Assembly (NCBI GenBank): GCA_001179505.1
Contig: CDMY01000255.1
Coordinates: forward strand, 496,001-560,000
Source: Vitrella brassicaformis CCMP3155
Taxonomy: Eukaryota > Protista > Chromerida
Direction: 5' to 3'
DNA: 64,000 bases
Below, in pieces: positions 9,856 to 31,400 of this stretch. Both the position numbers and the translations under genes were made by a program. How positions within the stretch are numbered: the first letter of the stretch is position 1; every line of letters begins with the position of its first letter. The notes under the pieces were generated by a model. That model ran no database searches. It had not been told where the DNA came from and saw only the letters and a program-made list of their open reading frames with translations.

Positions 9856-10063
9856 CCGTGGCTCCTTGTCTCTCTCGCTACTCCATCCCTCCCTCCTTGT
9901 CATATCACTTTGTCTGTCTGTTCTGTCTGTCCACCAACCACACTCAGTCGACTGACTGCGATACATCGTTCTCTCTGCAACCGTCTGCTCGGCACAACCA
10001 GCTATGCATCCACCATCCACTGGTCTACGGCCCATCCACCACACCGACCCACAGACAGACACA

Positions 10064-12525: not shown

Positions 12526-13862
12526 CTAGATAGACCAGTCCTCACAGATGGTGCCAGGTTTCCACATGGCCCGTCTGGATCGGTACTTATCGGATAGCTG
12601 GTCCTCCTCCTTGAGGTCTCTGTGCTTCTTGGGCTCCTCCGGCATGACCAGGAAGTGCTTGGCGCGGCTGATGTCGAAACCCCAGATACGGTAGCCCTCA
12701 CTCTTGAGCTTCTCGAAACACTCCTTCTGCAATACACACACACCGATACATACATACACACACACACAGACAGACAGACAGACAGGCAGACAGGCAGAGT
12801 GAGGGAGAGGAAGGTCCTTCGTTGGATGGTTGGTTTGTTGTTTGACCGCACCCACCTTGCACTCCCAGTCGCTCCATCTGCACTCTCTGCATCTGTGCTT
12901 GGGGTAGGCCCAGAACCAGGGGGCCTCGCTGTGCCAGCTGTAGTCGGTCTTGCGCGCGTCGACGAACGGCTGGGGAGCCTTGGCGGGAATCGGAGGCTTG
13001 TGCATCTGATATATCGATCAACCAGTCAATCGATGGATTGGATCCATCCATCCATGGCAGGGCAGCCATGTCAGCCAGCCCAGCCACCGAGTGTGTGCGC
13101 GTAGGTAGGGTAGGGTAGGTACCATGTGTTGGATGGAGAGGATCCAGATGTAGAAGAGTATGGGGAGGTGGCAGGCGCCCATGCCGATCTGCAGCATGAA
13201 CCACTTGCGCTCGTACTCGGTCATCATGATCATCTTGTAACGCTCGTTCGGGTCCATGTCCAACAGCAAATACTTGCGACTGCACACCAGACCAACACAC
13301 CACAGCACAGCACAGCACAGCCAACACACACGCACATACAGGAGGGTGGGCGGATGGACGCGCTTCGCTTCCCTGTGACGCCTGTCTGTCTGTCTGTCTG
13401 TGCGCCTCTGGTCCCTCCCCTGCTGACCTGTTCCATCTGCTCCAGTAGCCCGAGACATCCAGCCAGCGATAGAACCACTCTGCCCACGTCTGCAAACACA
13501 ACACAACACACCCACAACACTTGCCTTTGCCTCCCCTGCCCTCTGCACGTGTCTGTGTGCCGTGCTGTGCTGTGCTGTGCTGTGCTGTCCTGTCCTGGCT
13601 GTCCCGCGTCCACGTGTCGTGTTGTGGCGTCCCTCCCTCCCTGTACCTCTCTCTCGAGCGTGGCAGATCCGCCGACGCTGTGCCCGCCGATGTGGGATGG
13701 CGGGTGGAGTCCCCAGGGGCTGATGCGGCCGGTGTTGTCCCAGTTGGTGAACCCGCTGCTGTTCCAGCCCGTCCACTTCTGCCCCGGCTTCGTCCACGCC
13801 ACAGGCACCTGACGAGCCACACGCGCCTGCAGCCCGCGGATGGCCGTGCGGAAGAAACTCAT
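12526..13862 (-). CDS. Mitochondrion-targeted single-TM protein, probably a cytochrome c oxidase subunit 6A-like protein of myzozoans
   Basis: Presequence MSFFRTAIRGLQARVARQ, one TM (KWFMLQIGMGACHLPILFYIWILSI), then H-K-PP...FVDARKTDYSW (resembles the COX6A R-K-x-FPW motif) and CRECRWSDWECKKECF. Five exons. Confidence 0.5.
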
Positions 13863-13974
13863 GATGGCTACTCCTCCAGCACACGGGAAGGGGAGGCCTA
13901 CAGCCCAAAAATTACCTGGCAGGATCGGGTGCGTGAAACGTGTCCACAGAGAGGGGGAAAGGAGCAGGAGAAAG

Positions 13975-14722
13975 ATGGGAACTCTCCTGGGGAGTGACAC
14001 GGCGTCGCTGGCGTTGTCTCAAGTGATGGCGATGGGCGCGTCTGTCGCTGTCGTCGTGGCCGCCTCGACATACATCCTGAGGCAGCGGCGAGCTGTCAAG
14101 GAGGAGAGAGAGACCCAGGCGGCCTCGGCAGACCCCCCCCCCAGTGAGTGTGGTGGCAAGAAGGTGGCTCTGCTGCTGGTTGACCACGGCTCGCGGCTCA
14201 AGGCTGCCAACGACATGATATTCGACGTGGCGCGGCTGGTGCAGGGGCAGCGGGATGACTTGATTGTGGATGCGGCGCACATGGAGATTGCAGAGCCCAA
14301 CATACCCGAGGTGGTTGACAAATGCGTCAAGGTGGGGGAGGGAGGCACACAGACCGGCCGACCGACAGGGTAACAGCTCACAAGTGTGTGTGTTGTGTGT
14401 TGTGTAGGCCGGTGCGGAGAAGATCATTGTGCATCCTTACATGCTGGCGCCTGGACGCCATGCGACGAAAGACATACCCAAAATGGTATGTAACCAATAC
14501 AGACACACGCACATGCTCTCACTGCTCAAGGCGCATCATTTCTGTGTGTCTGTCTGTCTGTCTGTGCTTCTTGTTCAGGTGATGGATGCCATGGCGTCTC
14601 ACCCGTCGGTCGAGTACGAGGTGACGAGCTGCCTCGGCATCCACGAGAAGATCGGACAGGTCGTCCTCGAGCGGGCGGGGCTGGTCGCTGGGGCAGTCGC
14701 TGGGGCAGTCGCTGGGGCATAG
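13975..14722 (+). CDS. cbiX: Class II chelatase, CbiX/SirB-like (sirohydrochlorin ferro/cobaltochelatase), with an N-terminal hydrophobic segment
   Basis: Exons 13975-14331, 14408-14485 and 14579-14722 give LLLVDHGSRLKAAND...AHMEIAEPNIPEVVDKCVKAGAEKIIVHPYMLAPGRHATKDIP...LGIHEKI. The HGS, HMEIAEP and PGRH motifs are typical of CbiX/SirB. Confidence 0.9.
14686..14719 (+). repeat. 12-bp coding tandem repeat (gtcgctggggca) x about 3, encoding VAGA repeats at the CbiX C-terminus
   Basis: ggtcgctggggcagtcgctggggcagtcgctggggca directly before the TAG. Confidence 0.8.
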
Positions 14723-15736
14723 ACTAGACTGACACAGACAGAGACAGAGACAGACACGGGCAGGGCAGAGGTTAACGGGCGTAAAGCTCATGTCATGTGT
14801 GTACAGTGTTGTGATGGCTCGAGAGTTTTTTCCGCGTGGTGGGTCTTGTCTGTCTGCACATGGCTGCCGCCCTCCCTGCCTGCCTGCCTGCCTGTCTATC
14901 ATAGGTGGGTGCCTGTCTGTGGATATGAGTGAGTCGAGGCGTTGAAGGCACTGTTGACGCGAACGGTCTGTCTGCATGAGTACGGTACGGTCTCGTGTTG
15001 CGTTGAGGCCCACCCTGCATCGTGTCGTTGTTCGACTGCGAGTTATGCGAGTGCCATGTCCGGACACCGCTGCACCGGTCTTCTTGCCACCAAAATGGCT
15101 AGAAGACCGATGAGGTAGTTGTTGGATACGACAGTGGCATGGCTCACGGTCACAAGCAACACACGATGGGGTGGCGTGCTGGGGGTGTGGTGTGATGTGA
15201 TGTGATGTGGTGTTCGCTCGGGTGACCGAGCCACATGCCTGCCTGGGTGTGTCGTGTCATGGGGGATTGGATTTTTGACTGACATGGGGGGTGGGTGACT
15301 CATGGAATGGACCTTGCCTGCATGTGCATGTGTCAACGGCCAGTTTTGTTCTGACATCGGCTGATGGGTGCAGTGCAGTGCAGGTGCACACGCCGACACT
15401 AGATATGTATGTCGATCGAGTCAGTTGGTCAGTCAGTCAGTCAGTCAGTCGGTCGTGCGGGCTGTCGATGTGCTCGATGTCCGAACTGGCACTTCACGGA
15501 CAAATAGACACATACACACATACACTAACCATCTCTCGCCTCTCCTCTGCAGCCACACCACACCACACCACACCACCAGCTATTGACACCGCCCGTCAGT
15601 CAGTCAGTCAGTCTCATGATTGATGACTCTCACCTCATCAATCACCACACAGCTTAAAAGCCCTCCTTCCCCGCTCTAGCTATCTACTCTCTCCTCTCAG
15701 CCATAGTGTACACACACGCCCCAGCTGACTGACTGA

Positions 15737-16893
15737 CTACAAGGTGACGCCCCCCTCCCCCGACCTCACCTGCAGCTCAGGCGGCGAGCTGCCGGGAGCC
15801 ACAGGATTGCCTGGCCCCCCTGGACCGGCCGGCATGGTCTGTGGGGCGTGCCATTGGGGTAGAAGGCTCTGCTGGAGGGCGGCGGGGCCCTGCCAACGGG
15901 GAGGGGGCTGCACGGTGACGTTCAGCAGGGGCTGGAACTCGTATGCCTGATGTGTGTGGGTGTGTGAGCCGGGACGCAGGTATACATGGGTGTGTGTCTT
16001 TGTGAGCGTTGTGGGTGTTGTGTGCAGTTGGTTGCTTACTTTGATGTAGTCGAGGATGGTGTAGTTGACGATGCACATCAACAGCACGGCGCACACAAAC
16101 ACCAAAGAAAACCCGGGAGAGAAACTGATAACCAACCACAGCAGGGGTGGGTGGGCGGGGCTGGCTCGTTCGGCGGTTGGTTCGTTGGTAGGGCAGCTTA
16201 CTGGATATTCGTTGCAATGCCGATAACGGGAGTGTTGTCGAGATGTGACTGCGCGGCGTGCACCACGATCAGCCACGTGACGACGATAGCCACCGAGAGC
16301 ACCCCCTCCAGAATGGTCACTAGCTTGGCCCACACAAACAGGTCCAAGGGGTGGTACGGCACATCCGCGATCGCATAGTAAGGCCGCGTGTCGAGCGTCG
16401 ACCACAGGGCCGAGAGAGGCGGCATGCCTCTCCTGGGCTCGACGGTGGGAGCGGGCGCCCCCCTCCACACCATGACGACAGCTGCGGACATCTTCTGGAT
16501 CAGCCGGAGGGCCGCCGCCCGGCATAAGATCTGTATGAGGATGAAGAGGATGGTGAAGGTGGCCACGACGCAGAAGGACCGGACGTATGTGCAGCTGTCG
16601 GACGAGGAGCCGAACGGCCCGAAGTTCTGTCCGCCGCCGCTGTCTGAGTCGTCCTGCTCGCCGCACAGCGACTGGCGGAGCTTGGCGAGGGAGATGGAGC
16701 GGCTCTGGCCCTCCACCTGCTTGTTAGAGTAGGGCGTGAAGAAGATCTGACAGACAGGCAGCACACACACGAGAGGGTGGTGTGGTGTTGCAGACTATGT
16801 GTGTGTCGTTATATTATTCACCTGTTTCGATCTGATGGAGAAGAGCCCGACGTCCACATGCACCTGGTTGAACGCCGTCCGGCCGCTGCCAGA
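15737..16893 (-). CDS. Multi-pass membrane protein with a Pro-rich C-terminus, hypothetical; further 5' exons possible
   Basis: Hydrophobic segments CVVATFTILFILIQILC, LVTILEGVLSVAIVVTWLIVV and AVLLMCIVNYTIL. Last exon AYEFQPLL...GGVTL*. GT-AG introns. Confidence 0.55.
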
Positions 16894-17991
16894 CATCCTG
16901 CACACACACACACATGGGCCGGCGCGCCTGATGAATGGGAGGAAACAAAGTGATTCGCTCACCATCCGTGGCTTAGGAGGCAGCATAGGAGCAGGGCGAT
17001 GGTCGTGAGGCTAAATATCTGCACACCGACGCACATAAGCACGGAGCACCAGCCGTCCATCCATCCATCCGGGTGCGGAGATCTGACTGCATTTGTCTTT
17101 CTTTCTTCATCGTACCGTCAGCAGGTTGCCCCATCTGTGTTGCACAGGCGGCGGATGGACGGCGGGAAGCGGCTCACCGTGCGGTCCGTACATTGATGAC
17201 TCACCAGATGATTCAACTCACTCAACAACGGTTATGGGATACTCATCTACGGCTATGACGCCACACTGGACGTAGTTCCAGAGCCTCTAACGAGTCGGTT
17301 GGTCAAGGCGTGGGCTCGCAGTCAGCAAGAATCGTTTACACGGGGGCGTATGGCTGATCTAGAGTCGGTATGGATTTGCACACGCAAAGACACAAGCAAT
17401 CGCAGAAACACATGCGCACCATACGGCATGGATGATAGCAGCACTCTGATATAAACCGAACAGCCCATCAAACGCAATCACACAAGCGACTATTACATGC
17501 CCTACCAAACCACCCAACAACCCAAGCCCGACCCATAACAACACGTCCCCAAATCAAGAGGCAGTCAGAAATAGCGGGAGGGCTCCCTGAACCGCTGCCG
17601 AAATAGCGAGAGGCGAATGTCGTACATATTCACATGTCCGCTGTCAACGAGCGACGACATTCTCTGGCATACACACACACACACGGCCAGCCGCAAAAGA
17701 AGGGCGACACTGCATGTGAGCATTTCACAGAAACCACACACTGTTGGAACCAGATTCTACATCCACCCGGGCAGAAGCCCACATAGACCTGTGACACTCC
17801 CCTGCACGCACACAGACATTCACATCCATGGCCACCCGCTAAAAATCTGACGACTTATGTGCGGGGATCGAATCGGAAGCGATTCGGGAACTCACGCACG
17901 AGTGAGCGCACCTTGGTCTCCTGCACAGCTGGTGGGTCTCTGGAGGGTCCGAATGCGTGTAGCTCGGCAGGGAAGACCAATCTGGGGGCGA

Positions 17992-18530
17992 GTGAGATGC
18001 GGAATGGGGTGGTCTGGACAGCGCTGCTGCTCCTCCTGCTGATGTGCGTGGCGGCGAGAGTGACGGAAGCCGGCCTGGGGCCGTCCTTCAGGTGCTCGGC
18101 AGAGCGGCCCTACACTGTTGTAGCCGCCGCTGCCCCGTCAGTGGCCCTGCCCATGACGTCGCTCTTCCCTCTCAACGGCGGCACGCCGCCCTTCACTTAC
18201 CGCTGGTCGGCTGTGATGGCGCGGCGGGAGGTGCGGGGCTGCATCATCTGCCACTGGCGGAGAGGCTGCTGGTGAAGGACAGCCATAGGAGGGAGAGAGC
18301 GACGCCGGAAGACGACTGCGGCAAAGGAGAGAGGTAGACAAGCTGGAGCGCTCGCGGAAACAGCTGCGGGACTTGAGGATCGAGCAAGAGCGAAAGCTTG
18401 CAAGAATGCGGTATCATGAAGGCAGACAGATTGCCGCGACCAATGAGATGCAGCAGAAGTTGCGTGAACTGGAAAGCAGCATTGCTCGATTGGAGAGGCA
18501 GATCGAAGACACAAGGAGACGGCCCTTTTA
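17992..18530 (+). pseudogene. Chimeric pseudogene: 5' exon of the 28454 secreted-protein gene fused to the 3' end of the 25805-26149 coiled-coil ORF
   Basis: 17992-18322 matches 28449-28841 (with a 66-nt and a 1-nt deletion, giving a frameshift and a stop at 18275). From about 18320 onward it matches 25938 onward (ggcaaa...gaggtagacaagctggagcgctcgcgg). Confidence 0.8.
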
Positions 18531-18721
18531 GATAGGGCGATTAGACTGTCGGCTTGTGGTCAGAAGACAAGAACTGAACAGTCGCATGTCTCTTCATATG
18601 TTGTGTCCTATTGTCTCTTCGTGCGTCATCAAAAGACTCTACTGCCCGCACATAAACTCTACTGCCATTCCTTTACGCACATTGGCCTTAATGTCTCTCT
18701 GTGCCGTGCCTCTCTGATCCT

Positions 18722-19369
18722 TTAGGCGATCTGGCCGCAGCCAGCGATGATGACCGGCCGTGCGGTGCGGCCGCCCTGACTGCTCTGGGCTTCCATCGCT
18801 TTCACCACATTGGCCCCGTCAAGTACCTGCATGACAGACACAGATGACGGTGAGCACAGTTGTCATGTGTGTACCTTGCCGAAGACGACGTGCTTGCCGT
18901 CGAGCCAGGGAGTGGACACCGTCGTGATGAAGAACTGACTTCCATTCGTGTTCGGACCTGCACACATGTACGACACGGGGTGTGTCGGTTCAGTCACGTA
19001 CGTCTCCGTTGAGCCGTGTGTGTCGGAATCTACCGGAATTGGCCATGGAGAGGAGGTACGGCTCGGTGTGCTTGAATGAGAAGTCCTCGTCAGCAAACTT
19101 CTCGCCGTAGATGCTCTCGCCACCAGTGCCGTTGCCGGCCGTGAAATCACCACCTGAGCAACACATACATACACATTCACACATTCACACCGAGCGTGGT
19201 GCATGCGTACATTCGTGCATATACCTTGGCACATGAACATGGGGATGATGCGGTGGAATGTGCAACCCCTACATGTCCACACACACATACACACACATAC
19301 ACACACACACACACACATTGATGCCTGTATCTGCTCTCGTGTCGTCTCACTTGTAGTGTAGGGGCTTGC
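18722..19369 (-). pseudogene. Cyclophilin (PPIase) copy 1, 5'-truncated
   Basis: Exons KPLHYK | [14 protein letters not shown] | [25 protein letters not shown]...LSMANS | [13 protein letters not shown]...[11 protein letters not shown] | VLDG...GCGQIA*. Homology to copy 2 stops at about 19369. Confidence 0.8.
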
Positions 19370-20070
19370 AAATCAAAAACAGCGAGAGGCGAAAATGGTC
19401 AAACACCATCGTACACAAATCGCCATCGTACACACGCGCCACCGGCGGCAGATCGCGAGAGTTCCTCTCGTATCTCTTTGCTCATCGATCGCCGGCAGAA
19501 TGGCTACGTGGTTGACGCGCGCGAGGCAGCCGCTCATCGATTGCGACAAGCGCTTCAAGGAGAAGGAGACAGAAGGGGGTGGATGGAACTATCCATAGAG
19601 GAGAGACACAGAGAACCATGACGCGAGAACGAAATCGGCTTGCCCTATCGTATGGTGAGGTAAAAATGATGGAGGCAGCGAAGTGAAGGCGTGAAGGCAC
19701 GAGGCAAACCCAATCAAACATCAGTAGCGTCACAGGGCATTAACAATAGGAGCGTTCACTGCAAGAGGGCCGATCCATGAGTCTCGTGTCGCTACATAAA
19801 GTACGTCCAGACTGCTGCAGGCTAGTGAAGAGACATCTTATGCAGCGATGCTCTTTGCACTTTTCTCCTCATGTGTATACGCGTGTCGTATCGTATCTAC
19901 AGCTGCTTGCCTCTGTCTCGCGTTTTGATTCATGTCATGACGCTTCATCGATAGAAGACTTAAGCTTGAGGGTTCCACACCACACTCCCTGTCCATTGAC
20001 CAGGATCAGCCGCTTACAAGCCGAGCCACATAACACTGCTCCCGAAAAGATTTATCGCCTCACTCTGGAT

Positions 20071-21608
20071 TCATGCTTTAACGGGTTGGTTCGTTGCTCT
20101 TGCTGGCGACGGGGGCCTTCTTCCTGTTCTTGCTGTTATCTCGCCTACCAAAAGAAATGGTACGCCTACAAAGTGTTTTGGGGGTTGCATAGGTGCATTA
20201 AGCGGAGACCTTGCATATTTCGATAAAGCACCATGACGGAGACAAAGTCTTCGAAAGAAACAGTATCTACATAAGTGATCCATCCATGCCACTTACTATG
20301 TATGGCCTTTGGTGTCTCTCACCTTGGTCAGCCGTTCTGTTTTTCTTGAACTCATTGATCAGGTATTGCAGCTATGGTCGATCTTGATGGCTGAGACGAA
20401 CAGTGGCGAGATGCAGAGTGAGCACACTAAGCCTTTCAATGTGCTCAGTCACTATCATTGCGGTCAGAAACTGTGCCAGAAGCTCTTCGAATGAAAGCAG
20501 CACACTCCTCGAAAGCCTGCTTGAACTCTGCAATTTGCGCATTCGTCAGCCTCCCAACGGTGGAGCCTGCCACGAAACGAAGCGGAAAAGCGTATGAGCG
20601 GAACTATAGGTTTTCTTTCACCTGGTGTGAATGCAAGGGTGCTCATGATCTGAAAAGGGAGACACAATCACACAATCTCACAATCTCACAGATTGCATAG
20701 GCCTGTTGTTGCCAATCACCTGCTGCCTGATGCCTTCTATGGAGAAGCCGTACTTCTGTGCAATGGCAGAGAGTTTTTCTTCAAAGTCTGCGAATGTGAT
20801 GCCTAGCGTCCCCTCTTCTGTTGATTCAGCGAATATCCGATTGACATCGCTTGAGCTCAGCCGAGGACGGTCACCGAGGACCTTAGCATCCTGATAGGGA
20901 AAATTGTCCCGTGTGCCGACAATTCATGCATTTGCTTACCGCGAGTAGTCTGACAAACGATTGACTATCCAGCCTGTCCTGACCATAGCTGTAGAAGATG
21001 AAGATGGAATAAAGAGACAGATCGATAGGAATGGGGTCCCTGTGAAAAGAAGGGTGTAGAGAAATGAATCGGCTGCAAGTCCTTTTTCCTCTCTTGTGCG
21101 ACTTACCTGTGCCCTTTTGTCCACCGGCCTGTATATGTCTCCCACCCAGAGTCATCATACAGGGTTCCTTCTCCATGATACACACCCTGATGCCACTGCC
21201 CTTCGTACTCAGCCATCCCTCCTGGCCGATACTTGATGCCTTCGCCGTGATACATCCCTTGCTGCCATTGCCCCTCGTACTCTTTCTGAACGCCGCCCCT
21301 GTGATATTTGGTGCCGTGTCCATGGTATTCGTCAGCCTCCCACTCTCCGTAGTATTCCATCGCGCCGCTGCGGAGGAATGATTTGCCGACGCCGTCTCGT
21401 TTGCCGTCTTTCCACCAGCCCGTGTACTCCATCTTGGAGGGGTCGTCATCGAAGAACTTGGTGCCCTCGCCGTGGAACTTGCCGGCCCGCCAGGAGCCCT
21501 CATAGAGCAGGGCGCCGTCGCCCATATTCTTTAGCACTCCCAGGCCATCTGGGAAGCCGTTGCTATCGAGCTCACCCTCGTACTTGCCTGCCTTACCCCC
21601 AGTTGGCT
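20071..21608 (-). CDS. MORN-repeat + p25alpha/TPPP-like + EF-hand-like protein (5' part lost in a gap)
   Basis: MORN exon (YEGELDSNG...YTGRWTKGH) with donor at 21106. Exons 20940-21039 and 20690-20890 give SIFIFYSYGQDRLDSQSFVRLLADAKVLGDRPRLSSSDVNRIFAES...ITFADFEEKLSAIAQKYG (p25alpha-like). Then LTNAQIAEFKQAF and LQYLINEFKKNRTADQDTVSFEDFVSVM (calmodulin-like). One internal junction is unresolved. Confidence 0.7.
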
Positions 21609-21908
21609 NNNNNNNNNNNNNNNNNNNNNNNNNNNNNNNNNNNNNNNNNNNNNNNNNNNNNNNNNNNNNNNNNNNNNNNNNNNNNNNNNNNNNNNNNNNN
21701 NNNNNNNNNNNNNNNNNNNNNNNNNNNNNNNNNNNNNNNNNNNNNNNNNNNNNNNNNNNNNNNNNNNNNNNNNNNNNNNNNNNNNNNNNNNNNNNNNNNN
21801 NNNNNNNNNNNNNNNNNNNNNNNNNNNNNNNNNNNNNNNNNNNNNNNNNNNNNNNNNNNNNNNNNNNNNNNNNNNNNNNNNNNNNNNNNNNNNNNNNNNN
21901 NNNNNNNN

Positions 21909-22415
21909 CCTGACTGCTCTGGGCTTCCATCGCTTTCACCACATTGGCCCCGTCAAGTACCTGCATGACAGACACAGATGACGGTGAGCACAGTTGTCAT
22001 GTGTGTACCTTGCCGAAGACGACGTGCTTGCCGTCGAGCCAGGGAGTGGACACCGTCGTGATGAAGAACTGACTTCCATTCGTGTTCGGACCTGCACACA
22101 TGTACGACACGGGGTGTGTCGGTTCAGTCACGTACGTCTCCGTTGAGCCGTGTGTGTCGGAATCCACCGGAATTGGCCATGGAGAGGAGGTACGGCTCGG
22201 TGTGCTTGAATGAGAAGTCCTCGTCAGCAAACTTGTCGCCGTAGATGCTCTCGCCACCAGTGCCGTTGCCGGCTGTGATATCACCACCTGAACACAAATG
22301 AAGGATTACACATACACACACATTCACACCGAGCGTGGGTGCATGCATAGATTCGTGCATACCTTGACACATGAACATGGGGATGATGCGGTGGAATGTG
22401 CAACCCCTACATGTC

Positions 22416-22446
<31 letters not shown>

Positions 22447-23641
22447 ACACATACACACACACACACACACATTGATGCCTGTATCTGCTCTCGTGTCGTC
22501 TCACTTGTAGTGTAGGGGTTTGCCTTTGCTGCTTCTCTCGCCCGTGCACAACGCACGGAAATTCTCGGCAGTTATGGGCACCTTGTGGGCAAACAACTGC
22601 AGCACATTCCAGACACGACGACGCGCATATGAGCACGTCTTCCAAGCCGCCTCAATGCGTGACAGCATGGAAATCCCGTTCTCTCTCTCACGCGCCGTAC
22701 ACGCATATGCTGACCTCGAATGTGATACGTCCTGCGGGCGCGCCGCCAATGCTGATGTCGAAGAACACCTGGGGATTGTTTTCTTTGCCCGTGTTCGTTT
22801 GATGAGAGGTTTGTTCGTATGGTTGTGATTGCTGCCGCTGCCGCTGCTGCTGCTGCTGAGTTGCCATCGTGGCGGTTCTGACCGCAACAAAATGAGTCCA
22901 ATACACATGAAGCTTTCAATCTCGGCTGACCTATGCCCATTGGTCCATGGGCCTCTATGTGTCCCTCGCCCAGAGGCATTGTACATAATGCCTTCGCCGT
23001 GATACATCCCTTGCTGCCATTGCCCCTCGTACTCTTTCTGAACGCCGCCCCCTGTGATATTTGGTGCCGTGTCCATGGTATTCGTCAGCCTCCCACTCTC
23101 CGTAGTATTCCATCGCGCCGCTGCGGAGGAATGATTTGCCGACGCCGTCTCGTTTGCCGTCTTTCCACCAGCCCGTGTACTCCATCTTGGAGGGGTCGTC
23201 ATCGAAGAATTTAGTGCCCAAGCCGTGGAACTTGCCCGCCTGCCAGGAGCCTTCGTAGAGCAGAGCGCCGTCGCCCATATTCTTGAGCACACCCAGGCCA
23301 TCTGGGAAGCCGTTGCTGTCGAGCTCACCCTCGTACTTGCCTGCCTTACCCCCAGTTGGCTTGTACATCTTGGTGTGAATGCCAGAAGAAGGGGCCGAGC
23401 CGCCAGCGCGGAGCTGCTGAATCTCCTTGCGGAGCCGCTCTCTTTCCTCTCTCAGGCCCTCCAATCGTCCTTTGAGCAGCCCCACTTGTTCGCTGAGCTG
23501 CGCAATCTGGTCCTCCCGCCGCAAATCAGTCAGGGCGGATGATGCCGTCGGTGAGAGGGCCTCGGGATAGTCGGGATTGTCGGGCTGTTCTGACATGCCT
23601 GCAGCAAGTGCATAGTACATACATCGTTCGCCTGGAGTCAT
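21909..23641 (-). CDS. Coiled-coil + MORN-repeat exon spliced in frame to a complete cyclophilin (MORN-cyclophilin fusion); carries a +1 homopolymer frameshift
   Basis: The MORN exon ends ...WTNGH-AG at 22931. A GT...AG intron at 22878-22930 (53 nt) is followed by [10 protein letters not shown]...[21 protein letters not shown] | [20 protein letters not shown]...KPLHYK | [17 protein letters not shown]... to the gap. C5 at 23048-23052 versus C4 in the other copies shifts the frame. The cyclophilin could also start from its own ATG at 22867. Confidence 0.65.
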
Positions 23642-24610
23642 GTCTACCCGTCATGTCGCTCCTCGTTGGACACGAAATGCCTTTCTATCCCTCTCCAACC
23701 TGGGGGCGATGCTTCTATACCGTGGTAGAGGTAAGAATGACGTCGACCAAAGAAGAAAAACGACTCACTTGCGCGACGACGGATCTGAGCGAAGGGAATC
23801 GGCCCCAAATGCCCCCCAAATGCACGGACAGACCATGCGACTCCCTCTCTGCTCGCGAACAGCAGTGCGGCGGGCGTGAGATCAATGTAATTGCAACTGC
23901 TGCACCACGATTTTGAATGACACATCATACCACACGCAACGTACTTGAAATGAAATGAATCAGTCGACCCCCCTCTCCTGCACCCGAACACTCACACGTG
24001 CACACGCTGACGAGCTACTTGTCACCCATAAAACACGACAGAGGGCACACACAGACACACACAGACAAAAGCACACAAACACACACGACACAGGGTTTAC
24101 TAAGGCAGCACTGGCAGAGGCAAGCACAAGTTGAAAAACAACGCGATAAAAGGACGAGTAAGACACGGCAGGACAGTGCTGCAAGCAGGGCGCCAACCCC
24201 CGCCGTGTCACTCATGAACACACGCCCTCCACCGGGCCAGCCAGACACAAACAACATCATGTACCCTGTTTCCGGCCCCCCCCCCCCCCCNNNNNNNNNN
24301 NNNNNNNNNNNNNNNNNNNNNNNNNNNNNNNNNNNNNNNNNNNNNNNNNNNNNNNNNNNNNNNNNNNNNNNNNNNNNNNNNNNNNNNNNNNNNNNNNNNN
24401 NNNNNNNNNNNNNNNNNNNNNNNNNNNNNNNNNNNNNNNNNNNNNNNNNNNNNNNNNNNNNNNNNNNNNNNNNNNNNNNNNNNNNNNNNNNNNNNNNNNN
24501 NNNNNNNNNNNNNNNNNNNNNNNNNNNNNNNNNNNNNNNNNNNNNNNNNNNNNNNNNNNNNNNNNNNNNNNNNNNNNNNNNNNNNNNNNNCCCCCCCCCC
24601 CCTCTCTCTC

Positions 24611-25273
24611 TCAGCCTCCGATGCAGCGCGTGTAGTGTCTCTCATAAAGGCGGCGCTGCTCCTCCCGGTATCTTCTCTCCTGCTCCTCGCGAATGCGCCG
24701 CTGCCTCTCCTGCTCCGCCCGCTGACGCTCGGCAAGGGCTTGTTGCTCACGGTGCAGGTCCACCTGGAGAGAAGCCCTCGTGCCCTCCTTCTGCTGCATC
24801 GCTCGGCACAACTCGCCCTGCTGACGGTCTCTGCCGGCCATACGCTCCTTGATGTCGTCCTTTTCCTGACCAGCCGCGACGATGTGACCACGCTCATGGG
24901 CCACCTCGGCTTGCAGGCGCCGTGCGTTGGCGTCCTGCTGGCTTCTCTCCAGCACCTCTCGCTGCAGCTTCTGTTGGATGGCTCTCTCTCCTCGCACCAG
25001 ATCTTCGTGTTGCAGCCTCAGCCAAGCCTGCCGGTCCCTGTCTGTCTTGGCACGGAGCTTTTGCTTCAGCTTCCTGAGTGCGTCGTTGGTGGACTCGCCG
25101 CTCGATGGGTGGGAGGACTCGACCTCGCTGGAACATCGGGTGGTCCTGGGGGAGGCCTCGGACTCGCTTGGGCACGTGGTGGAGATCTCGTCGTCATCAC
25201 GCCGGTTGATGGCGTCATTGTCGGCGTCGATGAGGACTTTCGACAAGACTTCGCGACCGTCGCTCATGACCAA
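24611..25273 (-). CDS. Coiled-coil Glu/Arg/Gln-rich hypothetical protein
   Basis: 220-aa ORF rich in E/R/Q heptad-like sequence; its end abuts a gap. Confidence 0.55.
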   Translation of the reverse strand: MVMSDGREVLSKVLIDADNDAINRRDDDEISTTCPSESEASPRTTRCSSEVESSHPSSGESTNDALRKLKQKLRAKTDRDRQAWLRLQHEDLVRGERAIQQKLQREVLERSQQDANARRLQAEVAHERGHIVAAGQEKDDIKERMAGRDRQQGELCRAMQQKEGTRASLQVDLHREQQALAERQRAEQERQRRIREEQERRYREEQRRLYERHYTRCIGG

Positions 25274-25360
25274 GGAAGAGGGAAGGGAAGGAAAGGAGCG
25301 AAGAGAGCATCCTTGTGTTTAGGGTTGATGTTGTGTTTCACGCGGAAAAGTCCTGGCACC

Positions 25361-26149
25361 ATGCAAGGCAGACGGCTAACCGCTGCAGAGGTCAGCAGTC
25401 AGAAACAAGAAAGGAAAGCGAACACAGAACATTCTGGTTTTTTGAGTGGTCGCTTTCTTCAGCTGCGTGAACTGGTGGGGGAACAACAAGCTCAGCAGGC
25501 GGCGGAAGCCGAGGACGAGTCTTCCTCGCGGCGAACGGCGACCGATCCTGGAAGTCCCATTCATTGTGTAGGTGCACGAGTTCTTCGTGGATCATCGACG
25601 TGTGTGCCTCGATGTCTCTCCGTCGCCTGCAGCCTACTGATGCACCCCCCCTTGCGCATGGAGACGTGAGTGGAACCATCTCGGGGTCTCTGTCGTCACA
25701 AGGTGTGCGCCAGACAGTGACAGATTCTTACAGCTCTCTAATATGAGTCTCTATGTCTCTTTCTGCCTTCAGCATTCCTGCAGAACTCCGTCAGCGACGC
25801 TCAATTGCGCGAGCTCGCAGGAAGACGCAGGAAGAACCTGAAAATGATGGATCGCACTCGCTTTGAGACGATCAAGCTTTCCCAAGAAATTCGGGAAGAG
25901 AAAATCATGGACCGGCAAAGAGCCGCCGAAGAAGAATGGCAAAAGAGAGAGGTAGACAAGCTGGAGCGCTCGCGGAAACAGCTGCGGGACTTGAGGATCG
26001 AGCAAGAGCGGGAGCTTGCAAGAATGCAGTATCATGAAGGCAGACAGATTGCCGCGACCAATGAGATGCAGCAGAAGTTGCGTGAGCTGGAAAGCAGCAT
26101 TGCTCGATTGGAGAGGCAGATCGAAGACACAAGGAGACGGCCCTTTTAG
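25361..26149 (+). CDS. Coiled-coil hypothetical protein (exon structure of the 5' part uncertain)
   Basis: Last exon ...WQKREVDKLERSRKQLRDLRIEQERELARMQYHEG...EDTRRRPF*; its 3' part is duplicated at 18320-18530. Confidence 0.5.
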
Positions 26150-26339
26150 ATAGGGCGATTAGACTGTCGGCTTTTGGTCAGAAGACAGGAACTGAACAGT
26201 CGCATGTCTCTTCATATGTTGTGTCCTATTGTCTCTTCGTGCGTCATCAAAAGACTCTACTGCCCGCACATAAACTCTACTGCCATTCCTTTACGCACAT
26301 TGGCCTTAATGTCTCTCTGTGTCGTGCCTCTCTGATCCT

Positions 26340-26718
26340 TTAGGCGATCTGGCCGCAGCCAGCGATGATGACCGGCCGTGCGGTGCGGCCGCCCTGACTG
26401 CCCTGGGCTTCCATCGCTTTCACCACATTGGCCCCGTCAAGTACCTGCATGACAGACACAGATGACGGTGAGCACAGTTGTCATGTGTGTACCTTGCCGA
26501 AGACGACGTGCTTGCCGTCGAGCCAGGGAGTGGACACCGTCGTGATGAAGAGCTGACTTCCATTCGTGTTCCGACCTGCACACATGTACGACACGGGGTG
26601 TGTCGGTTCAGTCACGTACGTCTCCGTTGAGCCGTGTGTGTCGGAATCTACCGGAATTGGCCATGGAGAGGAGGTACGGCTCGGTGTGCTTGAATGAGAA
26701 GTCCTCGTCAGCAAACTT
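26340..26718 (-). CDS. Cyclophilin copy 3, 3' exons only (5' in gap)
   Basis: About 98% identical to copy 1, with substitutions giving [12 protein letters not shown] in place of [12 protein letters not shown]. Confidence 0.75.
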
Positions 26719-27018
26719 NNNNNNNNNNNNNNNNNNNNNNNNNNNNNNNNNNNNNNNNNNNNNNNNNNNNNNNNNNNNNNNNNNNNNNNNNNNNNNNNNN
26801 NNNNNNNNNNNNNNNNNNNNNNNNNNNNNNNNNNNNNNNNNNNNNNNNNNNNNNNNNNNNNNNNNNNNNNNNNNNNNNNNNNNNNNNNNNNNNNNNNNNN
26901 NNNNNNNNNNNNNNNNNNNNNNNNNNNNNNNNNNNNNNNNNNNNNNNNNNNNNNNNNNNNNNNNNNNNNNNNNNNNNNNNNNNNNNNNNNNNNNNNNNNN
27001 NNNNNNNNNNNNNNNNNN

Positions 27019-27728
27019 TCTCCATGATACACACCCTGATGCCACTGCCCTTCGTACTCAGCCATCCCTCCTGGCCGATACTTGATGCCTTCGCCGTGAT
27101 ACATCCCTTGCTGCCATTGCCCCTCGTACTCTTTCTGAACGCCGCCCCTGTGATATTTGGTGCCGTGTCCATGGTATTCGTCAGCCTCCCACTCTCCGTA
27201 GTATTCCATCGCGCCGCTGCGGAGGAATGATTTGCCGACGCCGTCTCGTTTGCCGTCTTTCCACCAGCCCGTGTACTCCATCTTGGAGGGGTCGTCATCG
27301 AAGAACTTGGTGCCCTCGCCGTGGAACTTGCCGGCCCGCCAGGAGCCCTCATAGAGCAGGGCGCCGTCGCCCATATTCTTTAGCACTCCCAGGCCATCTG
27401 GGAAGCCGTTGCTATCGAGCTCACCCTCGTACTTGCCTGCCTTACCCCCAGTTGGCTTGTACATCTTGGTGTGCACGCCAGAAGGGGGGGCCGAGCCGCC
27501 AGCGCGGAGCTGCTGAATCTCCTTGCGGAGCCGCTCTCTTTCCTCTCTCAGGACCTCCTCTCGTCCTCTGAACTGCCCCACTTGTTCCTTGAGGTGCGCA
27601 ATCTGGTCGTCCCGCCGCAAATCAGTCAGGGCGGATGATGCCGTCGGTGAGGGCCTCGGGATAGTCGGGATAGTCGGGCTGTTCTGACATACCTGCAGCA
27701 AGTGCATACCACATCCATCGTTCGTCAT
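27019..27728 (-). CDS. Coiled-coil + MORN-repeat exon, copy 3 (3' end in gap)
   Basis: 27019-27458 appears identical to 21170-21608; N-terminal coiled coil IAHLKEQV...[13 protein letters not shown]. Confidence 0.75.
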
Positions 27729-27751
27729 GCCGCTCCAATATGTAGTGCCGC

Positions 27752-28133
27752 CCCTGGTTGTTCACACGAAATGCCTTTCTATCCCTCTCTCACCTGAGGG
27801 CGATGCTTCTCTATGGAGGCAGAGGGAAGAACGACGTCGACCAAAGAAAAGATAACGACTCACTCAAGGGGACGGATCCGGGAGGAGGGAAATGGCCGCG
27901 AGTGGGAAGTCCTTGAAGGGAAGCTTGCGATAAGGCATCGATCCCTGGTTGTTCACACGAAATGCCTTTCTATCCCTCTCTCACCTGAGGGCGATGCTTC
28001 TCTATGGAGGCAGAGGGAAGAACGACGTCGACCAAAGAAAAGATAACGACTCACTCAAGGGGACGGATCCGGGAGGAGGGAAATGGCCGCGAGTGGGAAG
28101 TCCTTGAAGGGAAGCTTGCGATAAGGCATCGAT
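27752..28133. repeat. Perfect 191-bp tandem duplication (2 copies)
   Basis: ccctggttgttcacacgaaatgcc...ggcatcgat starts at 27752 and at 27943. A diverged single homolog lies upstream of MORN copy 2 (about 23670-23810). Confidence 0.9.
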
Positions 28134-28453
28134 CTCTGCACAGCCGACACACAGATGAAGTTCCCTCCTCCGTCGGAAATGCATGCAAAGCCCCCAGGCT
28201 CGCATGCGAAGCCCCCACAACGGAACGGCTGGTGCCCATTTACGGACGGAGGAACACTTTGTGCCGCGCTAGCAAGCTTCGCGAGTCCCGAATGTGCCTG
28301 ATTTCTCTGATCGGTAGTATTTCCCAGCGGGCCGGCGCCCCGGCGGCTTGGATTTCTATGTGCTATTATTTCCCCCTGCCTGAACAAAATGACGTGTCAA
28401 TAGAATAGGGCTGTTCGAGTGTGCCGATGATGAGGTGACATTTGGCAGGTGAG

Positions 28454-31400
28454 ATGCGGAATGGGGTGGTCTGGACAGCGCTGCTGCTCCTCCTGTTGAT
28501 GTGCGTGGCGACGGAAGCCGGCCTTGGGCCGTCCTTCAGGTGCCCGGCAGAGCGGCCCTACACTGTTGTGGCCGCCGCCGCCCCGGCAGTGGCCCTGCCC
28601 ATGACGTCGCTCTTCCCTCTCAACGGCGGCACGCCGCCCTTCACTTACACGCTGGAAAATAATGATGGCGTCCACGATGGTGGTCTGAACGTCACTGTGG
28701 ACGGGGGCGGTGTGCTGCTGGTCGGCTGTGATGGCGCGGCGGGAGGTGCGGGGCTGCATCATCTGCCACTGGCGGAGAGGCTGCTGGTGACGGACGGCCG
28801 GGGGAGGGAGGCCAGAGCCACGCCGGACGACGACTGCTGGCTGCACGTCGGTGGGTGGCTGTTCTTTCGAAAGAGATATATATGGGATGCTTGTCGGTAT
28901 ATATATGTGTGTCTGGTCGTGCAGACTGCAGCGAGCGCCCCTCCCACGCATACATCGTCGCAAAGGTAGGTACTCTCTGCTCGTCGGAAGGAATCCCCGA
29001 TCATTATGTATGGCTCACTGGCTTGTTTGCTGCTTGTGATTGCAATGCAGGCCCCCTACCTCCAGGCCATCATCGGCGGCGACCCCGTCACCCTGCCACT
29101 AAAGGACGTCTTCCCAACCGTCCCTTCGCCAATACCCGTCGAATCGCAGCCGGACCACCCCTATGTGCAGGCCTTTGGGGGCGAGCCGTACTATCCCCGT
29201 CCGGGGGCCCGCGTGACTGTCCATCGCGAAAACGACACATCGTCCCAGTGGCAGCTTGAGCTGCTTTGCGAGGGCCAGGCCCCCCTGGGCCCGTCGATGG
29301 TCTTCCTCTCGCCGTCCCGCGACCCCCCATTGGTCATGATCGACTCCCACCTCACCCTGAGCTCCACCAGCGGCGGTCAGGCATTTGGCATCGAGTGCCT
29401 CGCCACTGACTCGCCCACCTTTGCACGCGCCCCCCTTAACTCGCCCTTTGGCTACAGCCACCCCCTGGTCACCCCGGCTGACCGGCTCGCTGCCCTGCCG
29501 AGCCTCACGGCAGAGGTCGATGGGGTGATCGCGAGGACGTCCATGACGTCTGTGTGTTCGCTGCACCCCCGGTCGAGCATTCCGCCGTTTCGGAGCACTT
29601 TCAGCACCAAAAACATCGGCTACTTCAGGCAGAGCCCTCACCACATTGTCATCGATGTGGGCGTGGAGCTTGCTATCAGGTGACTGACAGACTCACAGAG
29701 AGAGGGGGACAGGAGGGAGCAATGCAATGTGTGTGTGGATGTGTGGCGTCTGTTTAACAGGCCTGTGGGTGAGGCTGACGTGTTGGAGCTCAAGTGCTCG
29801 GGCAAGTCGGCAGCCATGATGGGCGCCAGCAACGGGGTCGTCTACCAGACAACCATCGATGTAGGTGCACCTTCGCGGAAACAGACAGACCACACACACA
29901 GACATACATCGACAAGTGAGTGGCTTAGGCTATTCTCTGCGTGACGTGCGTGTATCAATCAGCTGGCGGGCACGTTGGTGGTGGCCGACCGAGGGGGCGC
30001 CAAGGCGGTCGCTCCACACGATGTCTGTCTCGTACAGCTACGTGAGGAAGGAACCAAACATGCCATTCACGGAATCGATCCATCTCGCTCTCTCTCTCTC
30101 TTGCCGATGGTCGACAGAGTGTGCAAGGGGCCTCCACTTCACCGCCTCCCCCTCCAATGGTGGTCGCATCCCCACCCTGCGTGCCGACGGCAGGGCCGCT
30201 ATGCCCATCTCCGACGTGTGTGACCTCCGGGGCGGCGAGGGGCCCTTCAGATTCGCACTCAATACTTCGTGGGGGCCGATGCAGCTGGGCGTCACCGATG
30301 ACGACAGAATTGCCCTCACGTGCGACGCGGCGAATGTCGGGGGGCTCTCGTCAGCTTTAATCGATCTGCAGGGGTAAACAAAGGGATGGATGGAGGGATT
30401 GAGGAGGGGACACATTCATTAATTCTGTTTGCTTGTGTCTGTTCCTTCTTTCCTTCAGTCTGTTGTACGCTGGTGACACCAAGACGAAGACCAAGACCAC
30501 GCCGCCGCCCAACCAGTGCCTCCTGCGCATCGGTCAGATCACAACAGAAACCAAAGGCAGACACACAGACACACAGACAACCTGTGTCCTTTCTATCTCT
30601 CATATCAATCAATCAGAGTGTACGGGCGGTCCCAGCAGCCCCCTGGATGTGTCGGCAGCCATGCCCCCGACATCGCCATCGCCCTCGTCGTCGGCAGCCC
30701 CAGCCCCGCCGACGGTCACGCGGCTGCGTGTGCGGCGCAACACGGGCCCCCAGTACGTCATGACCGTCCCCCGGACATGCTACCCCCCGCCCACAGACGG
30801 CCTCCCGCCATTCAGCTACAAGCTCGCAGAAGAACGTGCCAACGCACACTCTGCCCCTGGGACGGGACGGCAAAGCACCAGCAGCAGCAGCAGCTCACAA
30901 GGGCTGATCAGGGGGGGCGCTGGTGAGCTGGCCTTCTCCATGGGAGGGTCTGGGGCGCCGTTTGACGGCGGGATGGCGAAAGCGCTTGGAGACGCTGTGA
31001 CGTTCGCGTCACCTGCGTGGGGCGTGACGCTGTCGGTGGGCAGCCAGTATGGGCTGCTGGCCTTGGAGTGCGGGGCGGTCAGCCGGCCGGGCACCATCAG
31101 GCTGGACCTCTTCGGTATTATGCTCATGACCGACAAGAACGGCACCAAGATCACACCTGACCCGGGCACTTGTGTGCTGGATCTCGGTGAGTGCCGAGAT
31201 GAGATGAGATGCACCCACTGCACTGCCTGCCGAAGGAATGTGTGTTTTGCATTGTCACTTTCATTCAGAGTGTGTCGACGGCGAGGATACCGATATGTCG
31301 GCACCAGACCTGGCCCATGACGGGGCTGTCACCAGCCAGCACGGCAATGACTGCCCACTTCTGGAAGCCCCCACACCCCAGCTCACTGCAACGGTTGGCG

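What the first reader, a model, noticed from the sequence alone, without database searches (positions are those of the whole stretch)
18722..23641. Exon shuffling caught in the act: one MORN exon, one donor, two different C-terminal partners
MORN copies 1 and 2 both end at an equivalent phase-2 donor (GGG CAC/CAT AG|GT at 21107 and 22931). Copy 2 splices in frame to a full cyclophilin. Copy 1 splices in frame to p25alpha + EF-hand exons and is then followed by a cyclophilin lacking everything before KPLHYK. The simplest reading is that a MORN-cyclophilin gene duplicated, and in one lineage of copies a TPPP/EF-hand module replaced the cyclophilin 5' part. That would give a small family of coiled-coil-MORN scaffolds with swappable effector domains.
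Basis: partly seen in the sequence, partly recalled or inferred. Interest (0 to 1): 0.75.

Follow-up and report, generated by a model that had tools for sequence, protein, structure and literature searches.

The report
MORN genes with swapped tail domains
In the alga Vitrella, neighbouring duplicate genes share a coiled-coil/MORN front exon joined either to a cyclophilin or to part of a tubulin-binding p25alpha domain; it is a real but modest case of domain swapping in a badly assembled, wrongly annotated repeat.

Summary
The window is Vitrella brassicaformis CCMP3155. The sequence facts mostly hold.

- **Shared donor.** MORN exons end at homologous phase-2 donors at 21107 and 22931.
- **Copy 1 splice is supported.** It joins through a 67-nt GT-AG intron to p25alpha exons. 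An independent JGI protein (P0002, 348 aa, from a 1916-bp contig) has exactly these junctions.
- **Relic cyclophilin.** A cyclophilin 3' half, starting 20 nt before the end of the KPLHYK exon, lies downstream at 19369-18722.

Three corrections:
1. P0002's frame stops at 20447-20445. The "EF-hand exons" are an untranslated, frame-broken remnant, and only about 60% of a p25alpha domain is encoded.
2. Copy 2's MORN exon has an extra base (about 23046-23050), so it does not reach its donor in frame as assembled. I found no independent MORN-cyclophilin product.
3. The event is not fresh. MORN-core dS is about 0.15, and the last repeat is only 74.5% identical.

The gap at 21609 separates two genes. 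The public 657-aa model CEL97746.1 reads across it and is chimeric. Copy 1 and copy 3 MORN are 100% identical over 439 bp at contig ends, and P0002 bridges them, so the copy number (2 or 3) is unresolved.

Verdict: a lineage-specific domain replacement, partly supported, of moderate interest.

The parts
27458..27728 (-). 5' coding part (N-terminus plus coiled coil) of copy 3. It is the 5' part seen in the MORN-p25alpha product.
   Evidence: P0002 residues 1-187 map at 100% to 27581-27021. Weak coiled-coil hits (bZIP, ZapB).
27019..27457 (-). MORN exon copy 3. It starts at a contig end and is 100% identical to copy 1 at 21170-21608, including the extra MORN repeat that copy 2 lacks.
21107..21608 (-). 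MORN exon copy 1. Its 5' end is cut by the gap. It has six Pfam MORN stretches and ends at the phase-2 donor AG|GT.
   Evidence: Pfam MORN E=1.5e-18. Sequence read. P0002 residues 43-209 match at 100%.
21040..21106 (-). 67-nt GT-AG intron between the MORN exon and the first p25alpha exon.
   Evidence: It is removed in P0002 and in CEL97746.1.
20940..21039 (-). p25alpha exon A, holding the start of the domain (LYSIFIFY...FVRLLA).
   Evidence: 52% identical to p25alpha domain 2 at the C275 locus, with the same intron position after LL(A/K).
20720..20890 (-). p25alpha exon B.
   Evidence: Alone it scores Pfam p25-alpha E=0.0011. Within P0002 the score is 28.7 bits (cut-off 22.6), covering profile positions 17-90 of 153.
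20622..20649 (-). 28-nt mini-exon (IMSTLAFTPG).
   Evidence: Needed to keep the frame, and present in P0002.
20445..20566 (-). Last coding exon (STVGRLTNAQIAEFKQAFEE...DSD) with stop TGA at 20447-20445.
20073..20444 (-). EF-hand-like remnant, frame-broken and downstream of the stop. It is probably part of the 3' UTR.
   Evidence: Frames read. No Pfam hit even at E<=10. P0002's contig has about 870 nt beyond the ORF.
19370..20072 (-). Unique non-coding stretch between the remnant and the cyclophilin relic. 19443-19696 has one 83% match elsewhere in the genome.
18722..19369 (-). Relic cyclophilin 3' half: the last 19-20 nt of the KPLHYK exon plus four further exons, with stop TAA at 18724-18722. 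No internal stops.
22931..23641 (-). Copy 2 first exon (coiled coil plus MORN). One extra base at about 23046-23050 shifts the frame. The donor follows 22931.
22878..22930 (-). Predicted 53-nt GT-AG intron between MORN copy 2 and the cyclophilin exon. The cyclophilin's ATG lies 10 nt after the acceptor.
   Evidence: Sequence read. The acceptor is used in CEL97746.1. No independent transcript was found.
21909..22877 (-). Copy 2 cyclophilin. Six exons are present; the last is cut by the gap. It carries GGDIT in place of the canonical GGDFT.
   Evidence: Pfam Pro_isomerase E=2.2e-44 within P0019. Exon map.
21609..21908 (.). Assembly gap separating the 3' end of copy 2 from the missing 5' end of copy 1. 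By comparison with the other copies it must hide at least about 1 kb.
25919..26718 (-). Copy 3 downstream region plus cyclophilin 3' end (last two exons and part of a third). It carries R and L at invariant positions of the [10 protein letters not shown] motif. The contig ends exactly at a site that differs between paralogues.

Best explanation
This is a lineage-specific tandem gene cluster in Vitrella brassicaformis. An ancestral gene encoded a short coiled coil and about 6-7 MORN repeats in one exon. That exon was spliced through a phase-2 donor to a CypA-like cyclophilin that has introns of its own.

The gene duplicated. In one duplicate (beta), about 1.8 kb of foreign genomic DNA replaced the stretch from the first intron to the middle of the KPLHYK exon. 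This DNA carried the front of a p25alpha domain followed by EF-hand-like sequence, with its own introns. The old MORN donor now splices to the incoming p25alpha acceptor.

The resulting product is coiled coil + MORN + a partial p25alpha domain, and it terminates early. The EF-like part and the orphaned cyclophilin 3' half remain as untranslated relics.

Inferred function: both proteins oligomerise through the coiled coil and dock through the MORN repeats. One brings a prolyl isomerase to the site; the other brings a tubulin or microtubule contact.

Shown here: the sequence anatomy, the MORN-p25alpha splice and stop, and purifying selection on the MORN core. Inferred: the direction of the swap, the MORN-cyclophilin splice, and all function.
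For: - P0002 (JGI, 1916-bp contig) is collinear with the coiled coil of copy 3, the MORN exon of copy 1 and four downstream exons, all at 100% identity. It ends at the stop at 20447-20445.
- Pfam on P0002 gives MORN 6.6e-16 and p25-alpha 28.7 bits, above the 22.6 cut-off.
- The donors are homologous and both phase 2.
- Cyclophilin homology starts inside an exon at 19369, and the relic has no stops.
- The MORN core has dN/dS 0.09 at dS 0.146, so both copies were functional for most of their history.
- The cyclophilin shares intron positions with the standalone Vitrella paralogue P0143, so it was a DNA-level duplicate and not a retrocopy.
- The p25alpha exons share two phase-0 intron positions with the known Vitrella p25alpha/EF-hand gene locus on C275 (Orosz 2023, PMC10304595, Table 3).
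- No collinear relative appeared among the top 150 of 14,450 hits in 1.84 billion representatives.
Against: - No independent sequence supports the MORN-cyclophilin junction.
- Copy 2 is frame-shifted as assembled, and its cyclophilin has I in place of the active-site F in GGDFT.
- The U|cyclophilin junction at 19369/19370 rests on a single contig in a repeat-rich, gapped region.
- The relic's near-identity to copy 2 (256 nt without a difference) is far below the dS of 0.15 seen in the MORN core. It needs gene conversion or assembly collapse to explain it.
Confidence: 0.6

Rival explanations
1. Assembly artefact. The repeated pieces are collapsed or wrongly joined copies. There may be only two genes, with contigs 9856-21608 and 27019-47255 overlapping, and the relic cyclophilin or the three-copy layout is produced by scaffolding and gap filling.
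For: - 21170-21608 and 27019-27457 are 100% identical over 439 bp. Both abut gaps, and P0002 bridges them.
- Contig A ends inside a 59-nt stretch that is identical between paralogues.
- Contig C ends exactly at a paralogue-variant site.
- The first 256 nt of contig B equal contig A.
- Two public gene models read across gaps.
Against: - The three cyclophilin 3' ends differ from one another by 3-4 substitutions, including amino-acid changes, so at least three such ends exist.
- The MORN-to-p25alpha join is independently confirmed.
- The junction at 19369/19370 is flanked by unique sequence on one side and lies inside an N-free contig.
- The gap at 24291-24590 has poly-C on both sides, which supports that adjacency.
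Confidence: 0.2
2. An older, independent MORN-p25alpha(-EF) gene. The p25alpha gene already had MORN repeats and this donor long ago. The high similarity of the 5' exon and of the cyclophilin 3' piece comes from later ectopic gene conversion or recombination with the neighbouring MORN-cyclophilin gene. On this view there was no recent replacement of the cyclophilin's front half.
For: - Identity is mosaic: upstream 84%, coiled coil 93%, MORN core 96%, last repeat 74.5% (dS about 0.58), and cyclophilin 3' 97.8% with a 256-nt identical block.
- Copy 1 has an extra 72-nt MORN repeat next to the divergent end.
- No donor locus exists for the 1.8 kb.
Against: - A cyclophilin fragment that begins mid-exon directly behind the p25alpha gene is hard to create by conversion alone.
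- The final repeats share the unusual W-T-x-G-H-R ending and donor phase.
- The sample for the last repeat is only 18 codons.
Confidence: 0.15
3. MORN copy 2 and the cyclophilin are not one protein. Copy 2 is a decaying pseudogene, or the cyclophilin uses its own ATG (22867-22865), which lies 10 nt after the putative acceptor. On this view there is one partner, not two.
For: - Frameshift in the copy 2 MORN exon.
- GGDIT substitution.
- An ATG right after the acceptor.
- No MORN-cyclophilin protein other than the genome's own models turned up in two word searches.
- The public model avoids the frameshift only by using a cryptic internal donor.
Against: - There are only 63 nt between the MORN donor and the ATG, which leaves no room for a separate promoter.
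- The homologous donor is used in the sister gene.
- The MORN core shows 10 synonymous against 4 non-synonymous differences (Nei-Gojobori estimate), which argues against long-term decay.
- The frameshift is a homopolymer-length difference, typical of a sequencing error.
Confidence: 0.2

Closest known systems
Myzozoan multidomain p25alpha proteins with an EF-hand (Vitrella CEL98751, Chromera Cvel_31116, Polarella; Orosz 2023, PMC10304595, Table 3)
   Same: A p25alpha domain lies next to EF-hand-type sequence in the same lineage. The window's p25alpha exons share two phase-0 intron positions and 33-52% identity with domain 2 of the Vitrella C275 locus.
   Different: Those proteins have two complete short-type p25alpha domains and working EF-hands, and no MORN. 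Here there is one partial domain (profile positions 17-90 of 153), no GGP or Rossmann-like motif, and the EF-like part lies behind a stop. The N-terminus is coiled coil plus MORN.
Apicortin (partial p25alpha + DCX)
   Same: It is a precedent for a partial p25alpha domain working as one module of a chimeric cytoskeletal protein in apicomplexans and chromerids (PMC8293464, PMC7048138).
   Different: As I recall it, apicortin keeps the C-terminal part of p25alpha; I did not check this in the papers here. The partner domain is DCX, not MORN. It is widely conserved, whereas this gene has no collinear relative outside Vitrella.
Classic young chimeric genes (TRIM5-CypA in owl monkey, jingwei in Drosophila), from general knowledge
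   Same: A duplicated gene's 5' exons and splice donor are re-used with a different C-terminal domain. Cyclophilin acts as an exchangeable C-terminal module.
   Different: Those cases arose by retroposition of an intronless cDNA. Here both partner modules carry their own introns, so the exchange was at DNA level, and the displaced half of the old module is still present.
Standalone Vitrella cyclophilin P0143 (172 aa, also in MMETSP)
   Same: About 85-90% identical to the window's cyclophilin, with shared intron positions.
   Different: It has no MORN exon and no Q-rich linker, and it keeps the canonical GGDFT.

Membership tests
MORN repeat proteins (PF02493) | Several tandem 23-residue YxGxWxxGxxxGxG repeats scoring above the Pfam cut-off | tested here: met
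   Copy 1 exon: E=1.5e-18, 65.9 bits against a cut-off of 22.5, six stretches. P0002: 6.6e-16.
p25alpha / TPPP-like (PF05517) | A match above the Pfam gathering score | tested here: met
   P0002 scores 28.7 bits against 22.6, E=1.8e-6, residues 229-301. Exon B alone scores only 19.7 bits.
p25alpha / TPPP-like (PF05517) | A complete short-type domain: L(V)xxxF(Y)xxF at the start and GGP in the C-terminal half (Orosz 2023) | tested here: not met
   Only profile positions 17-90 of 153 are matched. The start motif is present as the variant LYSIFIFY. No GGP or GXGXGXXGR occurs after residue 212 of P0002.
p25alpha / TPPP-like (PF05517) | Binds or bundles tubulin or microtubules | not testable with these tools
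   This needs biochemistry or localisation. The single-sequence AlphaFold model was unusable (mean pLDDT 38.9).
EF-hand (calmodulin-like) | A helix-loop-helix with a 12-residue Ca-binding loop, detectable by Pfam and lying in the translated frame | tested here: not met
   No EF-hand family matched any of five candidate pieces even at E<=10, nor P0002. Only a calmodulin-like first helix (LTNAQIAEFKQAFEE) is translated. The later EF-like stretches are in other frames, behind the stop at 20447-20445.
Cyclophilin-type PPIase (PF00160) | A full domain above the cut-off with catalytic residues (R55, F60 and others in human CypA numbering) | tested here: inconclusive
   Copy 2 within P0019: E=2.2e-44, profile positions 1-143 of 159, with the end hidden by the gap. 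The FHRIIP arginine is present, but GGDFT reads GGDIT. The relic behind the p25alpha gene covers only the region from P0143 residue 56 onward.
Exon shuffling / chimeric gene by 3' module replacement | The same 5' exon and donor are joined in mRNA to two different downstream modules | tested here: inconclusive
   The p25alpha junction is supported by P0002. The cyclophilin junction is only predicted. No independent product was found, and the exon is frame-shifted as assembled.
Exon shuffling / chimeric gene by 3' module replacement | A remnant of the displaced module at the locus, and breakpoints that can be mapped | tested here: met
   The 3' breakpoint is at 19369/19370, inside the KPLHYK exon. 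The 5' breakpoint lies between 21229 and 21040. The relic exons are intact.

The most novel reading that the evidence does not exclude
The coiled-coil/MORN exon may be a portable docking scaffold whose paralogues were actively insulated after the tail swap. The coiled coil shows 12.5 non-synonymous against 1.5 synonymous differences (dN/dS about 3; Fisher p=0.001 against the MORN core). That could mean selection against mixed oligomers of the isomerase and the microtubule-binding form. In addition, the relic cyclophilin exons are kept intact and phase-compatible: the MORN donor and the relic's first complete exon are both phase 2. The p25alpha gene might therefore still produce alternative MORN/half-cyclophilin isoforms.
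Probability: 0.12. Interest if true: 0.55.

Novelty: new member of a known kind. Interest (0 to 1): 0.35.

Why it matters
It is a tidy natural example of how a new domain combination arises at DNA level. The old donor is re-used, the incoming module keeps its own introns, and the displaced half-gene is still visible. I found no description of a MORN plus partial-p25alpha architecture in the p25alpha survey of this lineage (PMC10304595), and it has no collinear relative in 1.84 billion representative proteins.

The practical result is that the public models CEL97746.1 (657 aa) and CEL97748.1 (293 aa) are artefacts that read across assembly gaps. They should be replaced by separate MORN-cyclophilin and MORN-p25alpha genes. 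The biological reach is limited: one locus, one species, and no functional data.

Tried and rejected
- **Reading the transcript contig.** Its cDNA nature is inferred from the intron-free collinear protein.
- **Metagenome scan with P0002.** It returned only bacterial MORN proteins (L026 checked). Records close to this genome are left out of that collection.
- **Donor-locus search.** No second copy of the p25alpha exons or of 19370-21169 exists. The only match is an 83% non-coding stretch of about 270 bp on C264.
- **Rfam on 14000-32000.** Nothing found.
- **ESM Atlas on the p25alpha tail.** Scores were at most 0.86, which is a lead only.
- **AlphaFold on P0002 without an alignment.** Mean pLDDT was 38.9, so no fold search was run.
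- **Pfam on flanking ORFs.** Nothing significant.
- **Literature.** No paper turned up describing a MORN-cyclophilin or MORN-p25alpha architecture.
- **Rejected: SL trans-splicing or polycistron reading of the acceptor before the cyclophilin ATG.** From general knowledge this is not known in chromerids, so it was not pursued.
- **Left out as instructed:** spliced models were searched exon by exon by reference or through database proteins, and the step of joining exons into a typed model was omitted.


Full report
**Source and layout**

The window is G000:C255:496001-560000 of a 72.7-Mb, 1064-contig assembly. Database hits name it Vitrella brassicaformis CCMP3155. Five 300-N gaps cut the window. 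The region of interest falls in four contigs:
- A: 9856-21608
- B: 21909-24290
- C: 24591-26718
- D: 27019-47255

All genes discussed here lie on the minus strand.

Self-comparison shows three repeated elements:
- Three cyclophilin 3' ends, at 18775, 21909 and 26393.
- Three MORN blocks, at 21170-21608, 22982-23361 and 27019-27457.
- A duplicated first exon of a plus-strand signal-peptide gene flanking the whole array (17992-18322 and 28449-28841).

**The gap, tested first**

Left of 21609 is the MORN exon of copy 1, cut off at its 5' end. Right of 21908 is the last cyclophilin exon of copy 2, cut off before its final codons. These belong to two different genes. By comparison with the other copies, the gap must hide at least about 1 kb: the rest of the exon, the downstream region, a promoter and a coiled-coil-coding 5' part.

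The public model CEL97746.1 (P0019, 657 aa) reads straight across this gap and fuses both genes. CEL97748.1 (P0001, 293 aa) does the same across the gap at 26719. Both are artefacts.

**Copy 1 anatomy**

Read, the structure is:
- MORN exon ending GGG CAC AG|GT, last exon base 21107, phase 2.
- 67-nt intron, 21106-21040.
- Exon 21039-20940.
- 49-nt intron.
- Exon 20890-20720.
- 28-nt mini-exon, 20649-20622.
- Last coding exon from 20566 to the stop TGA at 20447-20445.

The join is supplied by a database protein instead.

P0002 (348 aa, source JGI, from a 1916-bp contig) matches these exons with exactly these junctions and this stop. It is not the genome annotation. Its first 42 residues occur only in contig D (27581-27456), and its last 139 occur only in contig A. 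A collinear intron-free protein on a short JGI contig is most simply a cDNA.

Pfam on P0002 gives:
- MORN, 6.6e-16.
- p25-alpha, 28.7 bits against a cut-off of 22.6, but covering only profile positions 17-90 of 153.
- No EF-hand.

**EF-hand claim**

Only a calmodulin-like first helix (LTNAQIAEFKQAFEE) is translated. They lie in other frames, behind the stop, and match no Pfam family even at E<=10. They are a decayed remnant. They are probably transcribed as 3' UTR, since P0002's contig has about 870 nt beyond the ORF.

**Origin of the inserted 1.8 kb (19370-21169)**

The genome holds no second copy of it. Other p25alpha genes exist. The nearest is the C275 locus, whose layout is p25alpha, then EF-hands, then p25alpha. 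That matches the "2 p25alpha + EF-hand" protein CEL98751 listed by Orosz 2023 (PMC10304595, Table 3).

The window's p25alpha exons are 52% and 33% identical to domain 2 of that locus. They share its two phase-0 intron positions, after LL(A/K) and after IRQ(Q/K). So the module is an old, diverged paralogue of a known lineage-typical p25alpha/EF-hand family. It is not a fresh copy.

**Copy 2 anatomy**

- ATG at 23641, then coiled coil and MORN.
- Donor GGG CAT AG|GT after 22931, phase 2.
- 53-nt intron, with the acceptor ending at 22878.
- An exon that adds three codons, an ATG and a Q-rich linker before a CypA-like domain.
- Further exons running to the gap.

The splice would be in frame, but the MORN exon carries GGGGG where copies 1 and 3 have GGGG (about 23046-23050). 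As assembled, the ORF from the ATG therefore ends at 22955-22957, before the donor. The public model escapes this by using a cryptic donor inside the exon.

Two word searches should have found any independent MORN-cyclophilin product of 130-1150 residues. They returned none. A search with the cyclophilin C-terminus found only the genome's own model and a standalone paralogue, P0143.

In favour of a real fusion:
- The homologous donor is used in the sister gene.
- Only 63 nt separate the donor from the ATG.
- The frameshift is a homopolymer-length difference, typical of a sequencing error.
- The MORN core shows purifying selection (see below).

**The relic**

Homology between copy 1 and copy 2 resumes at 19369/22523, which is 19-20 nt before the end of the KPLHYK exon. 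It runs to the stop at 18724-18722. All exons there are open.

Polarised against P0143:
- The relic keeps the canonical GGDFT.
- Copy 2 has GGDIT.
- Copy 3 has R and L at invariant positions of [10 protein letters not shown].

The three ends are therefore distinct sequences.

**Age and mode**

| Segment | Identity or rates |
|---|---|
| Upstream | 84% |
| Coiled coil | 93% |
| MORN core | 96.3% |
| Last 51 nt of the exon | 74.5% |
| Cyclophilin 3' part | 97.8%, with a 256-nt block without any difference |
| MORN core, Nei-Gojobori | dS 0.146, dN 0.014 |
| Last repeat, Nei-Gojobori | dS about 0.58, from 18 codons |
| Coiled coil, Nei-Gojobori | dS 0.03, dN 0.085 |

By the counts of differing codons, the coiled coil has 10 non-synonymous against 1 synonymous. 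Fisher p=0.001 against the MORN core.

The duplication is thus moderately old, and both MORN copies have been under selection. The near-identity of the cyclophilin 3' part needs either gene conversion or assembly collapse. "Caught in the act" overstates it.

**Copy number**

- 21170-21608 and 27019-27457 are 100% identical over 439 bp. This includes the extra repeat and every site that distinguishes them from copy 2. Both blocks abut gaps, and P0002 bridges them.
- Contig A ends inside a 59-nt stretch shared by the paralogues.
- Contig C ends exactly at a paralogue-variant site.
- On the other hand there are three distinct cyclophilin 3' ends, and the B-C gap is flanked by poly-C on both sides.

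Two genes plus a fragment, or three genes, both remain possible.

**Wider distribution**

P0002 is alone in its 50%-identity cluster. In a full HMMER pass over 1.84 billion representatives, none of the other 149 listed hits has a best match reaching beyond query residue 226. All of them are MORN-only matches. Other MORN loci in the genome are at most 47% identical. The architecture appears confined to this locus.

**Mechanism**

The mechanism proposed is a DNA-level replacement of the 3' module in one duplicate of a MORN-cyclophilin gene.
- Shown: the sequence anatomy, the p25alpha splice and stop, and selection on the MORN core.
- Inferred: the direction of the swap, the MORN-cyclophilin splice, and the function.

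The proposed function is coiled-coil oligomers docked by MORN repeats that deliver either a prolyl isomerase or a partial tubulin-binding domain.

**Verdict**

The finding is a new member of a known kind, and I score its interest at about 0.35.

Noticed in passing
window 18722-23641 and 26481-27728: The public gene models CEL97746.1 (657 aa) and CEL97748.1 (293 aa) read across 300-N gaps. They fuse parts of different genes, and the first also uses a cryptic donor to skip a frameshift.
   Followed up: yes
window 23345-23554 and 27441-27650: The coiled-coil segment of the paralogues differs at 10 non-synonymous but only 1 synonymous codon (dN/dS about 3). The adjacent MORN core has dN/dS 0.09. 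This may reflect selection for paralogue-specific oligomerisation.
   Followed up: partly
window 17992-18322 and 28449-28841: The first exon (start codon plus signal peptide) of a plus-strand gene is present twice, about 92-96% identical. The two copies flank the whole 10-kb MORN array like the junction of a segmental duplication.
   Followed up: partly
window 27752-28138: A 191-bp segment is tandemly duplicated at 99.5-100% identity in the upstream region of copy 3.
   Followed up: no
window 19443-19696; L003:1501-1775 (G000:C264:14304-14574): A non-coding stretch of about 270 bp between the p25alpha gene and the cyclophilin relic has a single 83% match on another contig. It has no Rfam family and no clear ORF.
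   Followed up: partly
window 24280-24602: The gap at 24291-24590 has poly-C on both sides, so the break is probably a long C homopolymer and the two contigs are truly adjacent.
   Followed up: partly
window 19278-19320 and 22390-22470: A (CA)n microsatellite inside a cyclophilin intron differs in length between the copies.
   Followed up: no
L035:3700-5400 (G000:C275): This locus has the order p25alpha, EF-hands, p25alpha, probably the CEL98751 gene of Orosz 2023. One of its introns appears to use a GC-AG donor (AAG|GCAAGG).
   Followed up: partly
window 19268 and 21107: The MORN donor of copy 1 and the acceptor of the relic's first complete cyclophilin exon are both phase 2. Skipping the p25alpha module would still give an in-frame product of MORN plus half a cyclophilin.
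   Followed up: no
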